Source: Mytilus californianus | Lineage: Eukaryota | Direction: 5' to 3' | Length of the DNA: 64,000 nt | Assembly: GCF_021869535.1 (NCBI RefSeq) | Contig: NW_026262707.1 | Coordinates: 806,001-870,000, forward strand | In this document: positions 271-61,099 of the stretch, piece after piece | Layout of the letters: every line of letters begins with the position of its first letter | Numbering within the stretch: position 1 is the stretch's first letter | Made by a program: the position numbers and the translations under genes | Notes under the pieces: generated by a model | The model's input: only the letters and a program-made list of their open reading frames with translations | What the model was told of the DNA's origin: nothing | Database searches by the model: none

Positions 271-467
271 TATCTTCACTTTCAAACGAAAACCTCATAA
301 ATCTTTCATCAATCTCTGCCTTCCTGTCTGTACCTCATTGATGCTCAAACTCTGTCAGAAAGTTGTACATACTTCTGAGAATTACAGGTTGCATCCCTGG
401 ACATTTTCTGTATCTATCTATGAGGTCTTTTCTCATTTGCCTCGTCGCAAACTTCATAATATCTTCA

Positions 468-901
468 CCCCCAAGGGTGACTGGGGAATAGAAGTATGGT
501 CACCATTGGTCTTCCTCCGACCGGCAGTAAAACCCTTGCTAAAGTGGGGCGTCCGTTTGGCTGTGCGGGATGTACAAATTTGCAGCCACGTCCGGTCAGA
601 ATGGGGACGTTAAATCCGATGCCTCGTGTAAATAGAGTGCCACGCTCTTTGCACGTTAAAAACCCTTGCAACAACTCTTTGAGGGGTACGTAGGTGACCT
701 GTTGCAAGGCTAAATTTCTGTCCCTATCCAATATACCCTCATTTCCAGTGGCAGTCTAAATTTCTCCGACCTTAATCCCGGACGCCCCTATTACAGAATC
801 TACCTATTGTATTTATTGTTAATTTGTTCTCGTCCTGAACATGCATGAAATATTTGCCACTGGACGTTAAGCAACCAACAATCAATCAATCAATCAATCA
901 A
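468..901 (+). mobile_element. SINE-like family, full-length copy without TSD
   Basis: Starts cccccaagggtgactgggg, ends gccactggacgttaagcaaccaac(aatc)n; flanks show no duplication. Confidence 0.95.
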
Positions 902-2012: not shown

Positions 2013-2085
2013 CCACCCCCCCCCCCACCCCCCCCCCCCCACCACCACTGCCACTGGACGTTAAGCAACCAACAATCAATCAATC
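2013..2085 (+). mobile_element. Extremely 5'-truncated SINE insertion with C-rich 5' extension
   Basis: tgccactggacgttaagcaaccaacaatcaatcaatc preceded by a ~36 nt C-rich tract; 12-bp TSD ataagcaacacg at 2001-2012 and 2086-2097. Confidence 0.85.
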
Positions 2086-5620: not shown

Positions 5621-5801
5621 TTGTTGGTTGCTTAATGTCCAGTGGCAAATATTTCATGTATGTTCAGGACGAGAACAAGTTAACAATAAATACAAAAGGT
5701 AGTCTTATCATATTAATGGCCATTCGGGATGATGGTCGGGGAAATTTGGACTGCCACTGGAAAATGAGGGTATATGGGATAGGGACAGAAATTTTGCCTT
5801 G
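5621..5801 (-). mobile_element. SINE-like family, 3' fragment (duplicate of 90-270)
   Basis: Same sequence and breakpoint as 90-270. Confidence 0.9.
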
Positions 5802-5851
5802 TATCTTCACTTTCAAACAAAAACCTCATACATCTTTCATCAATCTCTGCC

Positions 5852-6269
5852 ACCCCAAGGGTGACTGGGGTATAGAAGTATGGTCACCATTGGTCTTCCT
5901 CCGACCGGCAGTAAAACCCGTGCTAAAGTGGGGCGTCCGTTTGGCTGTGCGGGATGTACAAATTTGCAGCCACGTCCGGTCAGAATGGGGACGTTAAATC
6001 CGATGCCTCGTGTAAAGAGAGTGCCACGCTCTTTGCACGTTAAGAACCCTTGCAACAACTCTTTGAGGGGTCCGTAGGTGACCTGTTGCAAGGCTAAATT
6101 TCTGTTCCTATCCAATATACCCTCATTTCCCGTGGCAGTCTAAATTTCTCCGACCTTAATCCCTTAATCTATTATAGATCCTACCTATTGTATTTATTGT
6201 GAACTTGTTCTCGTCCTGAATATGCATGAAATATTTGCCACTGGACGTTAAGCAACCAACAATCAATCA
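5852..6269 (+). mobile_element. SINE-like family, full-length young copy
   Basis: 13-bp TSD atcaatctctgcc at 5839-5851 and 6270-6282; empty site at 308-320. Confidence 0.97.
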
Positions 6270-6429
6270 ATCAATCTCTGCCTTCCTGTCTGTACCTCAT
6301 TGATGCTCAAACTCTGTCAGAAAGTTGTACATACTTCTGAGAATTACAGGTTGCATCCCTGGACATTTTCTGTATCTATCTATGAGGTCTTTTCTCATTT
6401 GCCTCGTCGCAAACTTCATAATATCTTCA

Positions 6430-6746
6430 CCCCCATGGGTGACTGGGGAATAGAAGTATGGTCACCATTGGTCTTCCTCCGACCGGCAGTAAAACCCTTG
6501 CTAAAGTGGGGCGTCCGTTTGGCTGTGCGGGATGTACAAATTTGCAGCCACGTCCGGTCAGAATGGGGACGTTAAATCCGATGCCTCGTGTGAATAGAGT
6601 GCCACGCTCTTTGCACGTTAAAAACCCTTGCAACAACTCTTTGAGGGGTACGTAGGTGACCTGTTGCAAGGCTAAATTTCTGTCCCTATCCAATATACCC
6701 TCATTTCCAGGGGCAGTCTAAATTTCTCCGACCTTAATCCCTTAAT
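6430..6746 (+). mobile_element. SINE-like family, 3'-truncated copy
   Basis: Paralogous to the copy at 468; stops at ccgaccttaatcccttaat. Confidence 0.9.
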
Positions 6747-17399: not shown

Positions 17400-19305
17400 T
17401 TTTTTTTATCCAAAAGGCTTCTTAGTTTTTCTGTAAATTTCTGTTCCAAATACTCTTTCTATGGCGGTAACTTTTAAATTTTTCATCGAATGATTATGCT
17501 GAATGAAGTGGTTGGCTACCGGATCTTCTGTTTTCTTTGTTCGTGTTTTTGAAAAGTTCAATAGCATCCGTTGATATAGTGTATCACCCGTTTGTCCTAC
17601 ATATATAAGTTTATCGCATTTTGTACAATTAATTGCATATACTACGCCTACGGTTTTACAATTTATTTGTCCCTGAATGGTATATTCTTTCCCTGTGTTG
17701 TCACAAAATACCTTGGTTTCATTTATGTGTGAGCATAATGCACAATGTTTACCGCATGGTCCACATCCATTAGTTTGTTTATAAAATAGTAATTTATGCT
17801 TCTTGTGCACTAAGATGTCTTTTATGTTGTTATCGCGTTTAAATGCTACGATAGGCGGATTGGGGAAAATTTTCTTTAGCCTGTTGGATTGATGGAGAAT
17901 TTTAAGATTTTTTCTTAGAATTGAATGTATATTTGGATGCGCTTTGGAAAAAGTAATTACTAAGGGTACTCTGTCGTTTTCTTTCTTTGGTTTGTACTAT
18001 AATATATCTTCTCGGTTTAATAATGTCGACTTTTTTAATTGAACTTCAGTTGACGAGTTATTGTATCCACGTTTTCTCAGGTGCGTTTTTATTTCTCCTC
18101 TTCTTATTTTGTAATTTTCTTCTGTTGAGCAAATTCTTTTGACACGAATACCGAGTCCATATGGTATAGCATTTTTTACAGAATTTGGATGGCTTGACGA
18201 AACATGTAAGTACTGGTGTTTATCTGTTGATTTTGTATAAAGATCTGTTTTAAGTTGTCCGTTTTCTATGTGTACAAACACATAAAGGAATTGAATGTTT
18301 TCAGTTGAGTAACGCATTTCTGTTTTAATTCGCGGATGTAAGTTATTGGACATTTCGTGAAATTTTTTTAATTCATCTAAACCATGTTCCCATATTCCCA
18401 AAATGTCATCAACATATCTCCAATATGAAAACGGGTGTAAATTGCTGTTTTGAAATAATTTTTTTCCCATTGTCCGAGGTAGGTGCAAGCATAATTCATG
18501 CCTAGATGGGAACCAATAGCTGTTCCTTCGGTTTGTAAAAAGTGCTTTCCGTTGAAGCTAAAATTTTTATTTTCAATGACTAAGTCCATCATTTTAAGTA
18601 CATCTTCAGTTGGGATTGATATATCAGATCGATTTTCTAATGCTGTTTTGCATGCTTCTCGTGCTTCTTTTCTTGGTACGCTTGGATACAATATAGTTAC
18701 ATCTAAACAAAACATTATTGCGTTGTCTGGTAATGGCTGTTGAATTGCATTTAGTTTGTTTAAAAAATCTGTTGTGTCTTTAATATAGGTGGGCAAGTTT
18801 CGAACATTTTCCGAAAGCTCGTTTTCGACTATTTCCGCGATTTTTTCTGTTGGATGGTTCCGCCCATTAATAATCGTTCTAACTGGATGTTTTTTTTTTT
18901 GTGTAATTTGAGATTGGCTTGTACTTTTCCGGGACATGTTCCTTTAGGTAATAGATATTTTTTCATGTCTTTGTCTATTATTTCTCTTTTACATAAATTT
19001 TCTATGAGTTTTTGTTTACTTTATTTTAATTTTTCTGTGTTAGATCCTTATCTATTGCTTTGTACGTATCGTTGTTATCTAATTCTTTTTCTACCTCTAG
19101 TTTATAATCTTCTAAGTTCATTATTACAACGCCGGATGATTTGTCGCTTGGTCGTATCACAATGCTTGTATCATACAACAGTTCCCGAATTGCCTTTTCT
19201 TCTTCAATAGTTATATTCATTTTGAATTTTCGGCTTAATCTACTTAATATTTCATCTTTTACGGTCTGAATATACTCGTCTAACCATCTTTCTTTTCCTG
19301 GGAAG
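17400..19305 (-). mobile_element. Penelope-like element: RT plus Cys linker plus GIY-YIG, frameshifted
   Basis: IVIRPSDKSSGVVIMN, LDVTILYPSVP, GTAIGS, WRYVDDILGIW, TDLYTKSTDKHQYLHVSSSHP, CGPCGKHCALC, VVYAINCTKCDKLIYVGQTG; several frameshifts; 5' truncated. Confidence 0.92.
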
Positions 19306-34461: not shown

Positions 34462-34891
34462 ATTGATTGATTGATTGTTGGTTGCTTAACGTCAAGTGGC
34501 AAATATTTCATGCATGTTCAGGACGAGAACAAGTTAACAATAAATACAATAAGAAGGTCTTGTCTTAATAGCGGCCATTCGGGATGATGGTCGGGGAAAT
34601 TTGGACTGCCACTGGAAAATGAGGCTATATTAGATAGGGACAGAAATTTTGCCTTGCAACAGGCCACCTACAGACCCCTCAAAGAGTTGTTGCAAGGGTT
34701 CTTAACGTGCAAAGAGCGTGGAACTCTCTTTACACGAGGCATCGGATTTAACGTCCCCATTCTGAACGGACGTGACTGCGAACTTGATACATCCCGCACA
34801 GCCAAACAGACGCCCACTTCGGCAAGCGTCTTACTGCCGGTCGGGAGAAGACGAAGTGACCATATTTCGTTTCCCTTAGTCACCCTTCGGG
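34462..34891 (-). mobile_element. SINE-like family, full-length older-subfamily copy
   Basis: 12-13 bp TSD (t)ttgttttgtagt at 34449-34461 and 34892-34904; 5' end ACCCGAAGGGT. Confidence 0.95.
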
Positions 34892-37018
34892 TTTGTTTTG
34901 TAGTTAATTCTTCTAGAATCTTGTTTAGAAAACTATCTATTCGATGAAAGAAAAAAAAATCTCTTGTTTAAATATCAATTTGTAAATTGGAAAAAAAACC
35001 TTAAATGCAATTGTTTTCATTATTTTATTGTAGTTAAATTATAAGAAGAATGGATTATTGTAATAACTGTAGTGTCGTTAATTGCATATGTATATTTTTT
35101 CCATTTGTTTTATATTTAGAAAGAATATTTTAAATTCATGTAATTTTGTTCATGTACATTTTTTAGTCTAATTATGGGTATTTGTTATTGAGTGCTTAAT
35201 TTTTTTTCATTAAAGATGTATGAGTTACTTACGAAATTTAAATTGACTACTAGGGAGTGTCATGACAATATTGTTTAGATAGATGGTTCAATTTCATGGA
35301 CATAGAAAATGTTGTTCGATTTTTTCTGTAAATGCTACATAATACCAATCTGCCATCATGGAATATTTTTAGAGTTTCAACTTGCACAATTAATTTAAAG
35401 TAGCAGTAACATGATGTGAGAATAAAGTGCAGTTAATAAGACATGTCTTTTGTTGTCCCCGTTAAGGCAAGATCACACTAAAATGATAGATGGGAGGGAA
35501 AACAACAATTTTTACAGGAAGTATCAATTTAAAATCCATTTTAAAATAGACTCAAAAACGTCAGTGAATATTTGTTTTCAATGTACGTACTTGGGTGTAA
35601 ATAAATTAGTTTTTAAACATAAACTTAAAGAAATCATTTGAATATAGCCACAAGATGCCTGACAACATTTTTTACATGCTAATAAAGACCAAATCAGTTT
35701 TGGTAGTAACTACCACATACAGAACATTAGTACCTATCTGGGTTGAGGTCTTTTTGGTGCTCTTTAAAATATTTGATGAATTTATAGGCTTTCCCGCAAT
35801 CGTCACATTTAACATATGTACATTGCTATTTTCACAAAGTTTGTAGTGACTGTATCTACTGTTTTCATACTGAAAAGATTTTGTGCAGGCGAAATTCTTC
35901 TCATTTTTTACCTACAATAAATGCATGTATATGACAATTCAATATAAAAATAAAGATTAATATAATGTTTAAAAAAGGGTTTTTTAACAACATAGCCTAT
36001 TTACTTCTTCCTTGGCATCTCATTTTCTTTCTGCACTCTCAATTTTGTAGTTGTTAAGTGCTTTCCTGTTCTCCTCTCCGAAGGTTCCTTTTCAGCTGAC
36101 TTGATATCCTCTTCTTTAGCCTTTTATCTCTTCAAACGGGCAATATAACTTCCAAACCTATTAAGTTCAGCCTGGTGACTTCTTTTTAATACATTCATCT
36201 CGGCTTTAAGCTCTCTATAAGATTAGAAAGTCTCTTCCGTCTGACAGAGGTTGTCAAGGGCGTTAAACTTACCACTGTCTTCCATAATTTCTCAAATCTG
36301 TTCCTTTACCTCCTCAATTAAGGCACAAGAGTGATCCTTGTGTAGTGTATCACATGATACGTCTGTTCCTAATTTTACAAAATATGGGTGAGGGTTGAAT
36401 AATGCAGCTATTGCGAGAATCTAGGTTGAACTGTTTCATCTTCTCAAGATGAGGCTTGTAACTTATAATATGTCTGTCCATACTTCTGCGAGTTTTTCCT
36501 CGATAATGGCAAATGTTGCAGGAAAATGGTACCTGGTCTTCCTCTACACGTGTCAGTATGGCAGTATCTCTTTTCTTGCCTTCATACAAACAGCCAGCCA
36601 AATTGCAATTATATTTTTCAGACTTGTCCCACCGCTGCCACCAGACATCATTATATATACCATTTCAGTTTTACAACACGTATATAGCTAGTAATCTATA
36701 ATCACACGACACATAGTGCAGTCTTATCTTATGTTTCAATCAAAATGAATTGATATATAACTATGGAGGTAATCCAAAAAGATATAAGAAAAGAAAAAAA
36801 AAATAATTGGAAAACAATTTGAGTGAAAAAAAATATATGGGTAAATGTGTAAGATCGGCCACTTTCTTTATTGATTACTTTACTATATTTTACAATGAAT
36901 TTGATTACGTTTAATAGATAGTTGTATTAGATGGTATCTTAAATCTACTACATTATAAAGACACTTATAGATAATTGCTTAAGATGTTCCATTAGATCGG
37001 CCACTTTCTTTATTGATT

Positions 37019-55184: not shown

Positions 55185-55675
55185 AGATCTGTACCTAGTG
55201 TCTTTTTGTTGTTGGGATGAACAAGTACCCGGCCACGTCCACTTGTATTTGTATGTATTTTTATCCATCTGATGAGTTAAGCCTTATCCAACTGATTTTT
55301 ATAGTTTGTTCTTATGTTGTACTGTTCCAGGTTAGGTGATGGTTGGGATCCCGCTAACATGTTCAACCCCGCCACATTCTGTAGGTATGTGATGGCCCAA
55401 GTCAGGAGCATGTAATTCAGTGGTTGTCGTTTGTTCATGTGTTACATATTTGTTTTTCGTTCATTTTTTGTACATAAATTATGCCGTTAGTTTTCTCGTT
55501 TGAATTGATTTACATTGTCATTTCGGGGCCTTTTACAGCTGACCATGCGGTATGAGATTTGCTCATTGTTGAAGGCCGTACGGTGACCTATAGTTGTTAA
55601 TTGCTGTGTCATTTTGGTCTCTTGTGGAGAGTTGTCTCATTGGCAATCATACCACATCTTCTTTTTTTTATATAT
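55185..55675 (+). repeat. Mytilus-type repeat, longer copy of 19310-19630
   Basis: Shared gggatcccgctaacatg...gaaggccgtacggtgacctatagttg...caatcataccacatctt. Confidence 0.75.
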
Positions 55676-55824
55676 ATAAAGGAAAGTAAATCAAAATGAG
55701 ATTTATAATGATATCATTTTTATTTTGAAATCAAATCAAGAAAGGGGATATACTATTCACATGTCCTGAATGAAACTGTCTAAAAGTGATGTTATATCTC
55801 AGTATAATGTTCTCCACATATATG

Positions 55825-56247
55825 ACCCCAAGGGTGACTGGGGTATAGAAGTATGGTCACCATTGGTCTTCCTCCGACCGGCAGTAAAACCCGTGCTAAA
55901 GTGGGGCGTCCGTTTGGCTGTGCGGGATGTACAAATTTGCAGCCACGTCCGGTCAGAATGGGGACGTTAAATCCGATGCCTCGTGTAAAGAGAGTGCCAC
56001 GCTCTTTGCACGTTAAGAACCCTTGCAACAACTCTTTGAGGGGTCCGTAGGTGACCTGTTGCAAGGCTAAATTTCTGTCCCTATCCAATATTCCCTCATT
56101 TCCCGTGGCAGTCTAAATTTCTCCGACCTTAATCCCTTAATCTATTACAGATCCTACCTATTGTATTTATTGTGAACTTGTTCTCGTCCTGAATATGCAT
56201 GAAATATTTGCCACTGGACGTTAAGCAACCAACAATCAATCAATCAA
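55825..56247 (+). mobile_element. SINE-like family, full-length young copy
   Basis: 12-bp TSD tccacatatatg at 55813-55824 and 56248-56259. Confidence 0.97.
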
Positions 56248-57061
56248 TCCACATATATGTTAATCAAAAGTTTTAGATCTAGTTGTCGTTTGATACACCA
56301 CCACCGATTAAGTTAGTGCATGAACCACTTGTTAGATCAACAAAAGTTTTCGGATTGATTGACTATTTGATGTTGATATTCTTGTTTTCCTACTGTATTA
56401 CTAATCAGATTATTTAAACTTTAAAAAAGTACTATGTTACCTATTTTAAAGTGCAACAATAACCTCTTGACTCTGTCTTATTTTGACCTATTTAATACAG
56501 AGTTACGAGCATCACAGATTTACGTTACGACCATCCTCAAATATTTTGTAGTTTAATTTCGTTCATCATACTCGAATTTTTGAATGACTATTTTACGAAA
56601 ATTCTAATATTTTTTGGTATTAAATTTTAGTTCAATATCAATGCACTCACCATTAGTGTGTATGAGACAAGCGGGTAGGCTCAAATGAACCTTTAACAGC
56701 ACGAAAATCGAAAAGATTAGTCTCCCATTTTCGGCTAACCGTAACTTTGCGTTACGACCATCCGCTTACCACCAGTGAAAATTCTCTTCGCTCAAACGAA
56801 TTAAAAGAATTCATATACTAGACTATATAATTATAATACCCTGATAGCCCCATCTGTGTCGTATCTCCTTCATATATGAAAATAACTAAAACACTAGTCA
56901 TATATTTTGTCAGGCATGATGACCATTTTGCATTAGGAGGCCCAATATCACAGGAGTCTACACTTGTATTACATGTCTCCTTCTCGGGGACCTTTTGACA
57001 AAAAATCAGAGCGTGAAAAAAAGACTAGCTGTAATTTCCGGTTGATACTCGAAGACTGATC

Positions 57062-58890: not shown

Positions 58891-59125
58891 TTATGGAGCT
58901 ACCATTTGATTTATATGGAGGGGCTAGGGTGAAATTTGAAAAATAAGCAGGACAGGAGTAAAAAAGAGTCAGGATAAACTAATGAAAAAAAAGGCAGGAC
59001 CGAATAGAGTGAAAAATAAAAAAGAGATTACAAGTAAAATAAAATGCAGGACAAAATTGTTCATCCTGCACTCCTCCCCCCCCCCCCCCCCCCCCCCCAT
59101 AAAAATCAAATTGTAGCTCCCTTAA
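58891..59125. mobile_element. TTAA-flanked MITE (Kolobok-like) with ~30-bp TIRs
   Basis: ttatggagctaccatttgatttatatggagggg versus cccccccataaaaatcaaattgtagctcccttaa. Confidence 0.75.
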
Positions 59126-59699
59126 TGTAAGACAGTTTCAAGAATTTAGGGAATATATTAAAAATGATATTGTTTTCTATTGTGTAAATGTAAGTTTTCA
59201 GTCCAATCAAGAAATTGTATATTTTAATTCAATTGCTCGGTTCAATGCAGATCAGTGAGACCAGCTAGATGTGGGTACTTTGACCTTAGTCTAAGGTCAT
59301 GGAACAATATGGCGATTAGTGAAATGATGGGCAGTGAAATCATCCTCCTCTATTATCAACATGGAGTGTCACTCCTATACCAGTTTCAATTTTTTAAGGA
59401 CCCCCTCCTCCCAAGTATTTTTGCCGCACCTGTAATGAATGAGTTTTCCTTACTAATAACAAAAATGACAGACATGCTCCATCAATCTATTGATTTTAAT
59501 AATTCTCGTTTGTGCATTATAATTTTGCTATTGCGGCCGAAAAAGATGATAAAACATACAAAAAAAGTTGAATAAGTCATAGGCATTTTATCAAAAGTAT
59601 GCAATTCATAAATGTTTACAAACCTTTCTCATATATTTCTCCATGCCTCTTTCTCAAATGTTTGCGAACCAGTAAAAAGCAAATGATAAATTTCAACAT

Positions 59700-60865
59700 T
59701 CAAATACAGATCTGCTCTTCGTTCATTGGAGCGAGATGAAGAAAGGAACACACAAAGAAAAACTTCCCCTACGAAGTCTCCTCAGAGAAGATCACGAGGT
59801 AGGCATCGGGGCGGAGGCACATCAGCACGGTCTTGTCATGGAGAGCGAGAACTCTCCTCACAAAATAGATATTCCACACTTAGTGATGATTCAGCGATGG
59901 ATTGCGAAAGTGATTTGCCACCTGAAAGATCACAATCTCAGTTTGATCGGAGTAAAAATGGTGGTAAACTCAATCACATTCGTTCAGTCTTTCTTATCTG
60001 TTGCATTTTGTCTTCAAGAAACTCATTTGAAAGAAAGTGACAAAGTAACTTTAAAAGGATACAACATCTACAGCACCTTTTCTAAGGAAGACGAACGAGC
60101 TGCTGGTGGATCAACCATTTTTGTGAAGGACAACGTCATTCATAGTACAGTCCAACTCACTACAGATCTGCAGGCAGTTGCTGTTCGTCTATCATTAGAT
60201 AAAACAATTACATTATGTTCTATATATATTCCACCTAATTCAAATATAGATAAAGCTAAACTAAAAAACTTAACTGATCAATTACCTACACCTTTTATAC
60301 TTATGGGAGACTTCAATGCTCACAATCCCTTGTGGGAAAGCAAGTCTTACAATGCCAAAAGTAAAATCATTGAAGACTTTGTCTCTCAAGAGGGTTTATG
60401 TATTTTTAATGATGGATCTAATACTTATCTTCACCCTGGAAACGGTTCTTATTCTGATATTGATATAACTACTTGTGATCCGTCTCTTCTTCTTGATTAT
60501 TCATGGCGTGTCCGTGATGATCTCTGTGGAAGTGATCACTTTCCAATTATTCTTGAGCATCTTTTTACTTCTGCTCAACAGAGAGTTCCTCGTTGGAAAT
60601 TAGACAAGGCTGATTGGCCCTTGTTTGAATCTCTTTGTCGAACAGAACTTCAATCAAAGATGTTTTAGGCTGTACAAGATCCAATTTTAACCTTTAATAC
60701 TGTTTTAACGTCTATTGCTGACCGAACAATTCCAAAGACCTCGGCAAATCCAAAACACCCTAGCAAACCATGGTATGACGACGCTAGTGATCAAGCCATT
60801 GATGACCGTAAAAAATCTGAAAGACGGTTTAATCAACATCCAAAACAAGACAATTTAAATAAGAT
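59700..60865 (+). mobile_element. I/Nimb-clade LINE fragment: ORF1 end plus APE endonuclease, 3' truncated
   Basis: FCLQETHLK, AAGGSTIFV, SIYIPP, LMGDFNAHNPLW, IDIT, GSDHFPII, RWKLDKADW, KPWYDDA; in-frame stop at 60668. Confidence 0.9.
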
Positions 60866-61099
60866 AAGGGGGCATCAAGTGTTACCCTTGACTGCCCTTC
60901 TGTTTAATACATATTTTAATACTCTAACTTAAGTTTGCCTAATACACATTTCATGTTCATCTTCAAAGATAACACAGAGTGTGTAAAGTTTGTAAAATCT
61001 AAGATGACAAGGAACACTTTTTCCTTCATTGCCAAATCAACAGTAATATTAGAAATCATCTTATAAATACAATTGATATAAATAAGATGTGGTAACTTG

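What the first reader, a model, noticed from the sequence alone, without database searches (positions are those of the whole stretch)
468..620. SINE with a sharply defined but non-tRNA, highly structured 5' head (candidate novel Pol III RNA or self-processing RNA)
Seen: TSD-bounded full-length copies start at the same position, usually A, in ACCCC(C)AAGGGU (ACCCGAAGGGU in 34462). The youngest copies (5852, 14095, 50792, 55825) contain no GTTCRA B-box. Weak A-box-like (TTGCTAAAGTGG/TTGCCGAAGTGG) and B-box-like (AAGTTCGCAGTC, older copies only) strings lie ~65-110 nt inside, too far from the 5' end for a normal type-2 promoter. Manual folding gives a terminal ACCC/GGGU hairpin, GGUGACU/GGUCACC, and a long stem (GUCUUC/GGGGAC plus GACCGG/CCGGUC) closing two hairpins, CCUCGC-UAAA-GUGGGG and GGCUGUG/(CGCAGUC, UGCAGCC or CGCAGCC). 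The variants in that last helix all keep pairing; GACCGG/CCGGUC has single mismatches in two copies. Known: almost all SINE heads derive from tRNA, 7SL or 5S RNA. Inference: this head comes from an unrecognised ncRNA, an upstream-promoter master locus, or an RNA that defines its own 5' end by cleavage.
Basis: partly seen in the sequence, partly recalled or inferred. Interest (0 to 1): 0.72.

Follow-up and report, generated by a model that had tools for sequence, protein, structure and literature searches.

The report
Abundant mussel SINE, non-tRNA head
The flagged bases are the head of a very abundant, recently active short jumping element (SINE) of a Mytilus mussel that does lack a recognisable tRNA head, but nothing supports a special fold or self-cutting; it copies the tail, and the first few letters, of a helper LINE that I identified here.

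Summary
Real element, ordinary kind, head still unexplained. Window 467-900 is one copy of a ~425-nt SINE. It has 10-14-bp target-site duplications and an (AATC)n tail. There are about 27 pieces in the window, at least 40 genome copies identical over nt 1-159, and roughly 10^5 copies by extrapolation.

The 5' end is sharp: one variable base (A in the youngest subfamily), then C4-5, then AAGGGTGAC. Rfam and ARAGORN find no tRNA, 5S, 7SL, snRNA or ribozyme in young or old copies.

"Highly structured" fails. Folding energy equals that of shuffles (z -0.23). RNA reads show no pile-up of starts at nt 1.

New here is the helper LINE, an EN+RT+RNase H-type element with an old fragment at window 59676-60929. 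The SINE tail shares its last ~20 nt and a covarying 3' stem-loop with it. The LINE also has a sharp 5' end, A + C6 + GGTGG, like the SINE's A + C4-5. The rest of the SINE head has no significant similarity to the LINE 5' UTR.

This scan flagged the same family at least five times before on other DNA of this genome. Closest published build: mollusc SINEs with extra or LINE-derived 5' domains (Matetovici 2016).

The parts
467..900 (+). The flagged full-length SINE copy (about 98% identical to the youngest subfamily over the head, 95% over the whole element)
467..522 (+). Leader of about 56 nt of unknown origin: A + C5 (468-472), AAGGGTGACT, G-run (483-486), GGTCACCATTGG (498-509)
   Evidence: No Rfam hit. 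No significant similarity to the helper LINE 5' UTR.
536..547 (+). A-box-like string TTGCTAAAGTGG, about 68 nt from the 5' end
   Evidence: No tRNA by Rfam or ARAGORN.
576..587 (+). Degenerate B-box-like string (AAATTTGCAGCC here; AAGTTCGCAGTC in older subfamilies)
603..740 (+). Conserved central body (GGGGACGTTAAATCCGATGCC...). It looks Deu-domain-like from memory only. It contains a long hairpin at 657-720 that gave a chance Rfam hit.
   Evidence: Domain assignment not tested.
831..866 (+). 3' stem-loop CGTCC...GGACG, matching the helper LINE's CGCCGC...GCGGCG
   Evidence: alignment A4. 100% of cells paired, 3 of 6 pairs compensatory, 0 of 500 shuffles reach this.
867..900 (+). TTAAGCAACCAAC + (AATC)n terminal repeat, identical to the LINE's 3' terminus
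5852..6276 (+). Youngest-subfamily copy used as reference; TSD ATCTCTGCC
55825..56249 (+). Youngest-subfamily copy on which RNA reads were laid; TSD CCACATATATG
34462..34892 (-). Older-subfamily copy (86-88% identical) with the better A-/B-box-like strings
59676..60929 (+). Decayed fragment (endonuclease domain) of the helper LINE family
   Evidence: Pfam PF14529/PF03372. 86-91% identical proteins in M. galloprovincialis. The public copies end in the SINE-like tail.

Best explanation
A non-autonomous retroposon (SINE) of a Mytilus mussel, copied and inserted by a young, abundant LINE that carries endonuclease, reverse transcriptase and RNase H-type domains (I/Nimb-like).

Shown:
- The SINE's last ~80 nt imitate that LINE's 3' stem-loop and carry its exact terminal TAAGCAACCAAC(AATC)n.
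- Insertions have 10-14-bp TSDs, frequent 5' truncation, and a few untemplated bases at the 5' junction.
- Both SINE and LINE have a sharply defined 5' end that starts A + C-run (SINE A-C4/5-AAGGGTG; LINE A-C6-GGTGG).
- In both, the MFE fold pairs the C-run with a nearby G-run.

The head is composite:
- a ~56-nt leader of unknown origin;
- a stretch with worn A-/B-box-like strings that no tRNA model recognises;
- a conserved central body.

Inferred:
- The fixed 5' end is simply the 5' end of the source RNA, copied to completion.
- That end is set by the same process that sets the LINE's own end. This would be an internal initiator at +1 (Pol II-type, as in other I/jockey-type LINEs), or a 5'-terminal requirement of the LINE machinery.
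- It is not set by self-cleavage or by a tRNA-type Pol III promoter.
For: - TSDs, tail and truncated copies.
- Abundance and youth: at least 40 copies 100% identical over nt 1-159; about one copy per 15-20 kb in 200 kb of random sample.
- Helper LINE: SINE-tail matches lie 3 kb downstream of the EN domain in three public Mytilus copies. 3' ends with TSDs were read.
- LINE coding content: ORF2 of 1223 aa with EN, RT and RVT_3/RNase H-like domains; relatives carry PF00075.
- Tail alignment over ~80 nt. 3' stem 100% paired, compensatory changes at 3 of 6 pairs, 0 of 500 shuffles.
- LINE 5' end: L012:707 reads ACCCCCCGGTGG after an AT-rich flank. 39 further genome copies at 90-99% identity (most 97-99%) begin to align within a few bases of it, 15 at exactly that base. 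An independent Logan contig starts there.
- MFE folds pair C-run with G-run in both elements.
- Against Pol III type 2: the most active subfamily has lost the B-box-like string. Older subfamilies carry TTTT at about nt 275.
- Stranded run X21 shows 2-5 times more sense than antisense signal over the SINE.
Against: - Apart from the first 5-6 bases (plus GGTG a few bases on), SINE head and LINE 5' UTR show no significant similarity (local alignment p 0.35-0.93; nhmmer E>1). A shared 5' module therefore rests on very few bases.
- The C-run/G-run helices are no more stable than shuffles.
- RNA reads give no pile-up of starts at nt 1, and most reads run on into unlike flanks, so most SINE RNA seen is read-through.
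- No poly(A) signal precedes the tail.
- The young consensus has no T4, which is compatible with Pol III (P 0.12 by chance).
- Which polymerase transcribes the source copies was not tested.
Confidence: 0.5

Rival explanations
1. A tRNA-derived (Deu/Meta-type) SINE whose worn internal A and B boxes still recruit Pol III. The ~56-nt leader is a later 5' addition, for example by RT template switching, that is transcribed because initiation happens unusually far upstream.
For: - The A-box-like string fits tRNA positions 8-19 except position 9. The older B-box-like string keeps G53, T54, T55, C56 and C61. The A-B spacing of about 42 nt is tRNA-like.
- No T4 run in the young consensus.
- Published bivalve SINEs of these superfamilies are tRNA-derived (PMC11481361). 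Scallop MESC SINEs carry extra 5' domains ahead of the tRNA part (PMC4758252).
- Two earlier agents of this scan reached this reading.
Against: - No tRNA score in Rfam at E<=10 on 74-551-nt slices of young and old copies. ARAGORN is silent down to 80% thresholds.
- An A box at +68 is far outside the usual +8 to +20.
- The youngest, most prolific subfamily has lost the B-box-like string.
- Older subfamilies carry TTTT inside the body.
Confidence: 0.25
2. One or a few master loci with an upstream (external) promoter, or an unrecognised host small RNA gene, supply the RNA. Dispersed copies are dead on arrival.
For: - Very tight young subfamily: at least 40 copies identical over 159 nt.
- Stepwise subfamilies.
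- No recognisable internal promoter.
Against: - Several subfamilies differing in the head have each amplified.
- No head-only locus was seen in 430 kb of held Mytilus DNA.
- No Rfam family matches.
- Cannot be tested further without the whole genome.
Confidence: 0.12
3. The head is a self-cleaving or otherwise self-processing RNA that cuts itself out of longer transcripts just 5' of the A.
For: - Sharp 5' end.
- Most SINE RNA in libraries is embedded in longer transcripts.
- Precedents exist: HDV-like ribozymes at LINE 5' ends and L1Tc/NARTc Pr77, discussed in PMC4758252.
Against: - No hammerhead, HDV-like, twister, pistol, hatchet or other ribozyme family at E<=10.
- An HDV-like layout is impossible around the only P1-like pairing (nt 1-6 with 15-20, 8 nt between).
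- The first base varies among subfamilies.
- No energy excess and no covariation.
- No excess of reads starting at nt 1.
Confidence: 0.04

Closest known systems
Pectinoid MESC SINEs and LP-SINEs of molluscs (Matetovici et al. 2016, PMC4758252)
   Same: TSD-flanked, tandem-repeat-tailed mollusc SINEs. An extra 5' domain of about 70 nt sits in front of, or replaces, the tRNA-derived head. The helper is of the I/Nimb type, and Pol II transcription has been proposed.
   Different: Their 5' domain is alignable to the first ~68 nt of Nimb-type LINE 5' UTRs. Here only the first 5-6 nt (plus GGTG) match the helper LINE. No poly(A) signal lies ahead of the tail. Homology to Nimb-17_LMi itself could not be tested.
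HCD (Deu/Meta/MD) tRNA-related SINEs of bivalves (Nishihara 2016, PMC4824008; Martelossi 2024, PMC11481361)
   Same: The host group includes Mytilus. Build is head + conserved central domain + LINE-derived tail. Nimb and CR1-Zenon partners are reported. Size and abundance are similar.
   Different: Those families are defined by a detectable tRNA head at the very 5' end. Here no tRNA is detectable and about 56 nt precede the A-box-like string. Central-domain identity was not testable without the libraries.
Non-autonomous elements sharing both ends with their LINE (NARTc/L1Tc Pr77, RIME/ingi, R2 SIDEs, SINEU/Tx1)
   Same: A non-autonomous element that carries its LINE's 3' recognition signal and also begins like its LINE.
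   Different: In those cases tens of nucleotides (77 nt, a ribozyme, or a whole snRNA) are shared. Here only a terminal A + C-run is shared.

Membership tests
SINE (LINE-dependent non-autonomous retroposon) | Short, non-coding, variable-length TSDs, 5'-truncated copies | tested here: met
SINE (LINE-dependent non-autonomous retroposon) | 3' end shared with a partner LINE | tested here: met
tRNA-derived (type 2 Pol III) SINE | Head recognisable as a tRNA | tested here: not met
   Rfam E<=10 on young and old copies; ARAGORN
tRNA-derived (type 2 Pol III) SINE | A box near +8 to +20 and B box 30-60 nt downstream | tested here: not met
   A-like string at +68. B-like string only in older subfamilies and lost in the youngest.
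5S-, 7SL- or snRNA-derived SINE | Head matches the source RNA family | tested here: not met
   No RF00001, RF00017 or snRNA hit. A short GGGTGAC..GGGAATA resemblance to 5S recalled from memory could not be checked.
LP-SINE (LINE-promoter SINE) | First ~70 nt homologous to the start of a Nimb-type LINE 5' UTR | tested here: not met
   Against the Mytilus helper LINE: local alignment p 0.35-0.93, only ACCCC shared. Against Nimb-17_LMi, I-3_DR and RTE-9_CPB: not testable, no library.
LP-SINE (LINE-promoter SINE) | Poly(A) signal just upstream of the terminal repeats | tested here: not met
   No AATAAA or ATTAAA in the last 60 nt
Deu/Meta HCD SINE superfamilies | Central domain alignable to the Deu or Meta consensus | not testable with these tools
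No supplements held. The resemblance is from memory only.
Self-cleaving ribozymes (hammerhead, HDV-like, twister, pistol, hatchet) | Match to a family model or its core fold | tested here: not met
   manual check of the HDV layout
I/Nimb-type LINE (the helper) | ORF2 with APE endonuclease, RT and a C-terminal RNase H domain | tested here: met
   PF03372, PF14529, PF00078 and PF13456 on L061. PF00075 on most relatives. Clade-level phylogeny not done.

The most novel reading that the evidence does not exclude
The SINE has given up a tRNA-type promoter. It is expressed and completed through a short 5'-terminal module that it shares with its I/Nimb-like helper LINE: A + C-run, paired with a nearby G-run. 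That module would act as a +1 initiator for Pol II or as a 5'-end signal for the LINE machinery. This would make it a Pol III-independent 'SINE' that mimics both ends of its LINE with minimal sequence.
Probability: 0.2. Interest if true: 0.55.

Novelty: new member of a known kind. Interest (0 to 1): 0.3.

Why it matters
This may be one of the commonest repeats of the mussel genome (roughly 10^5 copies by extrapolation) and it is still active, so how it is transcribed matters for annotation and for mussel genome evolution. If its 5' end works like that of its helper LINE, it would add a concrete, testable case to the small set of SINE-like elements that do not rely on a Pol III small-RNA head. 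As it stands, it is an ordinary LINE-dependent SINE with an unexplained leader. No new RNA class is in evidence.

Tried and rejected
- **tRNA, 5S, 7SL or ribozyme origin.** Rfam at E<=10 on 74-551-nt slices and at gathering threshold on 134 kb, plus ARAGORN at relaxed thresholds. Nothing.
- **Special structure.** MFE z-scores about 0. My pseudoknot string was one column off; its -1 slide, the true register, gave 88.7% paired and 3 pairs changed on both sides, while the other slides gave 1-3.
- **Leader-only family.** L039:4483 has the leader joined to the body without the A/B region, but a genome search shows it is a single rearranged copy.
- **Leader in other contexts.** BLAST and nhmmer over 430 kb of Mytilus DNA found none.
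- **L058:6118 as a LINE 5' end.** Rejected. That copy is truncated at 6415 and the upstream sequence is flank.
- **Poly-C at window 59076 as an RT-added tract at a LINE junction.** Rejected. It belongs to another repeat.
- **Metagenome scans.** 0 and 2 hits.
- **Paper search for the sequence.** 0 hits.
- **Cross-species depth through SINE-antisense ORFs.** Only 85-91% identical copies turned up.
- **Random genome sampling.** The 5S gene and more LINE 5' ends therefore could not be read.

Full report
**What is there.** Window 467-900 is one full-length copy of a ~425-nt dispersed repeat. BLAST of that copy against the window gives 27 pieces on both strands. Twelve or so are full length. The rest are 5'-truncated at various points, which is typical of LINE-mediated insertion.

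Full-length copies are flanked by 10-14-bp target-site duplications and end in (CAAT)n/(AATC)n. The genome is a 1.65-Gb assembly. The best protein matches name Mytilus galloprovincialis and M. trossulus.

At least 40 genome copies are 100% identical to the youngest window copy over nt 1-159. Twenty random 10-kb samples hold about one copy per 15-20 kb. That is on the order of 10^5 copies, some of them very recent.

**The 5' end.** 29 of 30 young genome copies start ACCCCAAGGG directly after the flank. In other subfamilies the first base is C, G, T or A in front of CCCCAAGGG, and the C-run is 4 or 5 long. Between the TSD and the element there are often 1-5 extra bases with no strong bias: 5 G, 5 C, 3-4 A and 1 T among the single extras (read). 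The sharp end is therefore real, with slight raggedness.

**Is the head a known RNA?** No.
- Rfam 15 at E<=10 gives no tRNA, 5S, 7SL, snRNA or ribozyme. I searched the young copy (551 nt and 74 nt slices) and an old copy.
- A gathering-threshold scan of 134 kb of this genome gives nothing at all.
- ARAGORN finds no tRNA in the window or in 74 head sequences until the threshold is lowered to 70%.

The A-box-like TTGCTAAAGTGG (nt 69-80) and the B-box-like AAGTTCGCAGTC (older subfamilies) are there, with tRNA-like spacing. But the youngest subfamily reads AAATTTGCAGCC. A decayed tRNA remnant behind a ~56-nt leader is possible but not demonstrable.

**Is the head specially structured?** No evidence.
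- MFE of nt 1-154 is -50.1 kcal/mol against -49.1 +/- 4.5 for dinucleotide shuffles. For nt 1-60 z is +0.68.
Only one pair changes on both sides (1.6 expected), and nearly all shuffles do as well.
- A longer hairpin (nt 4-15 with 31-42) has a few double changes in single old copies. These are decayed copies, not source genes, so this is weak.
- The H-type pseudoknot (C2-5/G16-19 with G8-C14/G32-C37) that other readers proposed also shows no clear covariation (-1 slide row).
- By hand, an HDV-like fold cannot be placed. The only strand complementary to nt 1-6 lies 8 nt away.

**RNA.** I laid three raw-read RNA runs and one metatranscriptome on window 55625-56450.
- SINE sequence is present at moderate depth on both strands. 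The excess of sense signal is 2-5-fold in the apparently stranded run X21.
- No position near nt 1 (55825) passes the tool's criterion for a pile-up of starts.
- 48-81% of what was laid, depending on the run, continues into unlike sequence, although that count also includes another repeat at 55625-55680.
- The metatranscriptome contig carries the SINE inside a longer piece.
- These are poly(A)/cDNA libraries, so an unpolyadenylated unit-length RNA could be missed.

**The helper LINE (new here).** Window 59676-60929 encodes an APE-type endonuclease. Its relatives are 86-91% identical Mytilus proteins.

In three public copies (L056 and L058 from M. galloprovincialis, L057 from M. trossulus) a match to the last ~30 nt of the SINE lies about 3 kb downstream of the endonuclease, at the LINE's 3' end and next to TSDs.

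A 6043-nt Logan contig (L061) carries ORF1 (563 aa, no Pfam hit) and ORF2 (1223 aa). ORF2 has Exo_endo_phos, RVT_1 and RVT_3. Most relatives also carry RNase_H PF00075. This is an I/Nimb-like build.

SINE tail and LINE 3' UTR align over about 80 nt (A4).
- Both end in TAAGCAACCAAC(AATC)n.
- Both have a stem just before it: CGCCGC/GCGGCG in the LINE and CGTCC/GGACG in the SINE.
- With two related LINE lineages added (L062, L063), this stem is 100% paired with compensatory changes at 3 of 6 pairs. 0 of 500 shuffles reach this.

This is the classic 'stringent' SINE-LINE partnership.

**The LINE's 5' end.** One of my genome loci (L012) holds the LINE's 5' part, with a young SINE inserted at LINE nt ~782-794.
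- The LINE starts ACCCCCCGGTGGATCG after an AT-rich flank.
- I searched the genome with 40 nt of that flank plus 114 nt of LINE. It returned 39 other copies, most at 97-99% identity.
- Their alignments begin at or a few bases before that A, mostly within six bases. Fifteen begin exactly at it and seven one base before.
- The Logan contig begins at the same place.

So LINE and SINE both have a sharp 5' end that reads A + C-run, with GGTG a few bases further on. In both, the MFE fold pairs the C-run with a G-run 10-30 nt downstream.

Beyond that there is no significant similarity between the SINE head (nt 1-62, 1-160 or the whole element) and the LINE's first 120 or 600 nt. Local alignment gives p 0.35-0.93 against shuffles, and nhmmer gives E>1.

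The 5' UTRs of the related LINEs align with the Mytilus LINE only from about nt 195 on. I therefore could not test conservation of the terminal helix across LINE lineages.

**Polymerase.** Unresolved.
- The young consensus has nine TTT runs but no TTTT (P 0.12 by chance).
- Older subfamilies carry TTTT at about nt 275.
- No poly(A) signal precedes the tail.
- Loss of the B-box-like string in the most successful subfamily argues against a type-2 Pol III promoter. So does the A-like string at +68.

**Comparison with what is known.**
- Matetovici et al. 2016 (PMC4758252) describe mollusc SINEs in which about 70 nt from the start of Nimb-type LINE 5' UTRs either replace the tRNA head (LP-SINEs) or sit in front of it (scallop MESC SINEs). 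They propose Pol II transcription.
- Martelossi et al. 2024 (PMC11481361) catalogue Deu, Meta and MD SINEs in Mytilus with Nimb and CR1-Zenon partners.
- The present family fits this landscape in build and in helper type. It fails the LP-SINE defining test against its own helper LINE, because only the terminal bases are shared.
- I could not test it against the published LP or Deu/Meta consensus sequences (no supplements held).

**Earlier notes of this scan**. At least five follow-ups on other pieces of this genome reached 'abundant SINE, non-tRNA leader, fold unproven'. My results agree. One (s1-340065) stated that the head resembles the folded 5' end of the helper LINE. I confirm the helper LINE and the shared A + C-run/G-run start. 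I find no wider sequence homology, and I could not check the claimed covariation across many LINEs.

**Verdict.** This is a real, very abundant, recently active SINE. The observation of a sharp, non-tRNA 5' end is correct. The claims of exceptional structure, self-processing or a novel ncRNA source are unsupported. The most economical reading is an ordinary LINE-dependent SINE with a composite head whose extreme 5' end mirrors that of its I/Nimb-like helper. Moderate-to-low interest.

Noticed in passing
window 59676-60929 (+): Decayed endonuclease fragment of the LINE family that turned out to be the SINE's helper. No RT follows it in the window.
   Followed up: yes
L012:707-3159 (G000:C92:6158557 onward): A near-intact 5' part of the helper LINE with a youngest-subfamily SINE inserted at LINE nt ~782-794 (13-nt TSD). 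Both families were therefore active at about the same time.
   Followed up: partly
window 300-900 versus 5680-6741: The SINE copies at 467 and 6429 share identical upstream flanks, and the inverted truncated copies at 90-270 and 5621-5801 match each other. This points to a local segmental duplication of about 6 kb.
   Followed up: no
L044:1419-1443; window 2016-2048: Two of 92 SINE 5' junctions carry long C or CCA-rich tracts (C25 in place of C5; a C/CCA tract before a 38-nt truncated copy). That is more than the background of C runs predicts. It could be slippage or untemplated addition by the LINE RT.
   Followed up: partly
window 59076-59130; L042:7103; L006:485: Another repeat family that begins with a long poly-C followed by ATAAAAATCAAAT(T/G)GTAGCTCCCTTA.
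   Followed up: no
L058:10881-12565: The last ~840 nt of a helper LINE copy are repeated three times in tandem, each ending in the (AATC)n tail.
   Followed up: no
P0001-P0016 (ENA assemblies, e.g. ERZ6864376): The SINE's antisense strand is open for 95 aa or more. It is called as 'proteins' of 63-162 aa in public metagenome assemblies. These are annotation artefacts, and they show mussel DNA in those assemblies.
   Followed up: partly
window 657-720 (+) and 34641-34704 (-): The long hairpin in the SINE body (CCTTGCAACA...TGTTGCAAGG) gives a sub-threshold Rfam hit to the lambda CIII thermoregulator (23 bits against a cut-off of 50). This is a chance match to a hairpin.
   Followed up: yes
L031:6500-9400 (-) and L033:4979-9300 (+): Two other LINE families. 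One ends in AATAAA + (ATTCA)n. One is interrupted by a SINE copy at L033:6360-6782. Neither shares the SINE's tail.
   Followed up: partly
window 17409-18943 (-): Three overlapping open frames of 186-196 aa without Pfam hits among those tested. They look retroelement-like by eye only.
   Followed up: no
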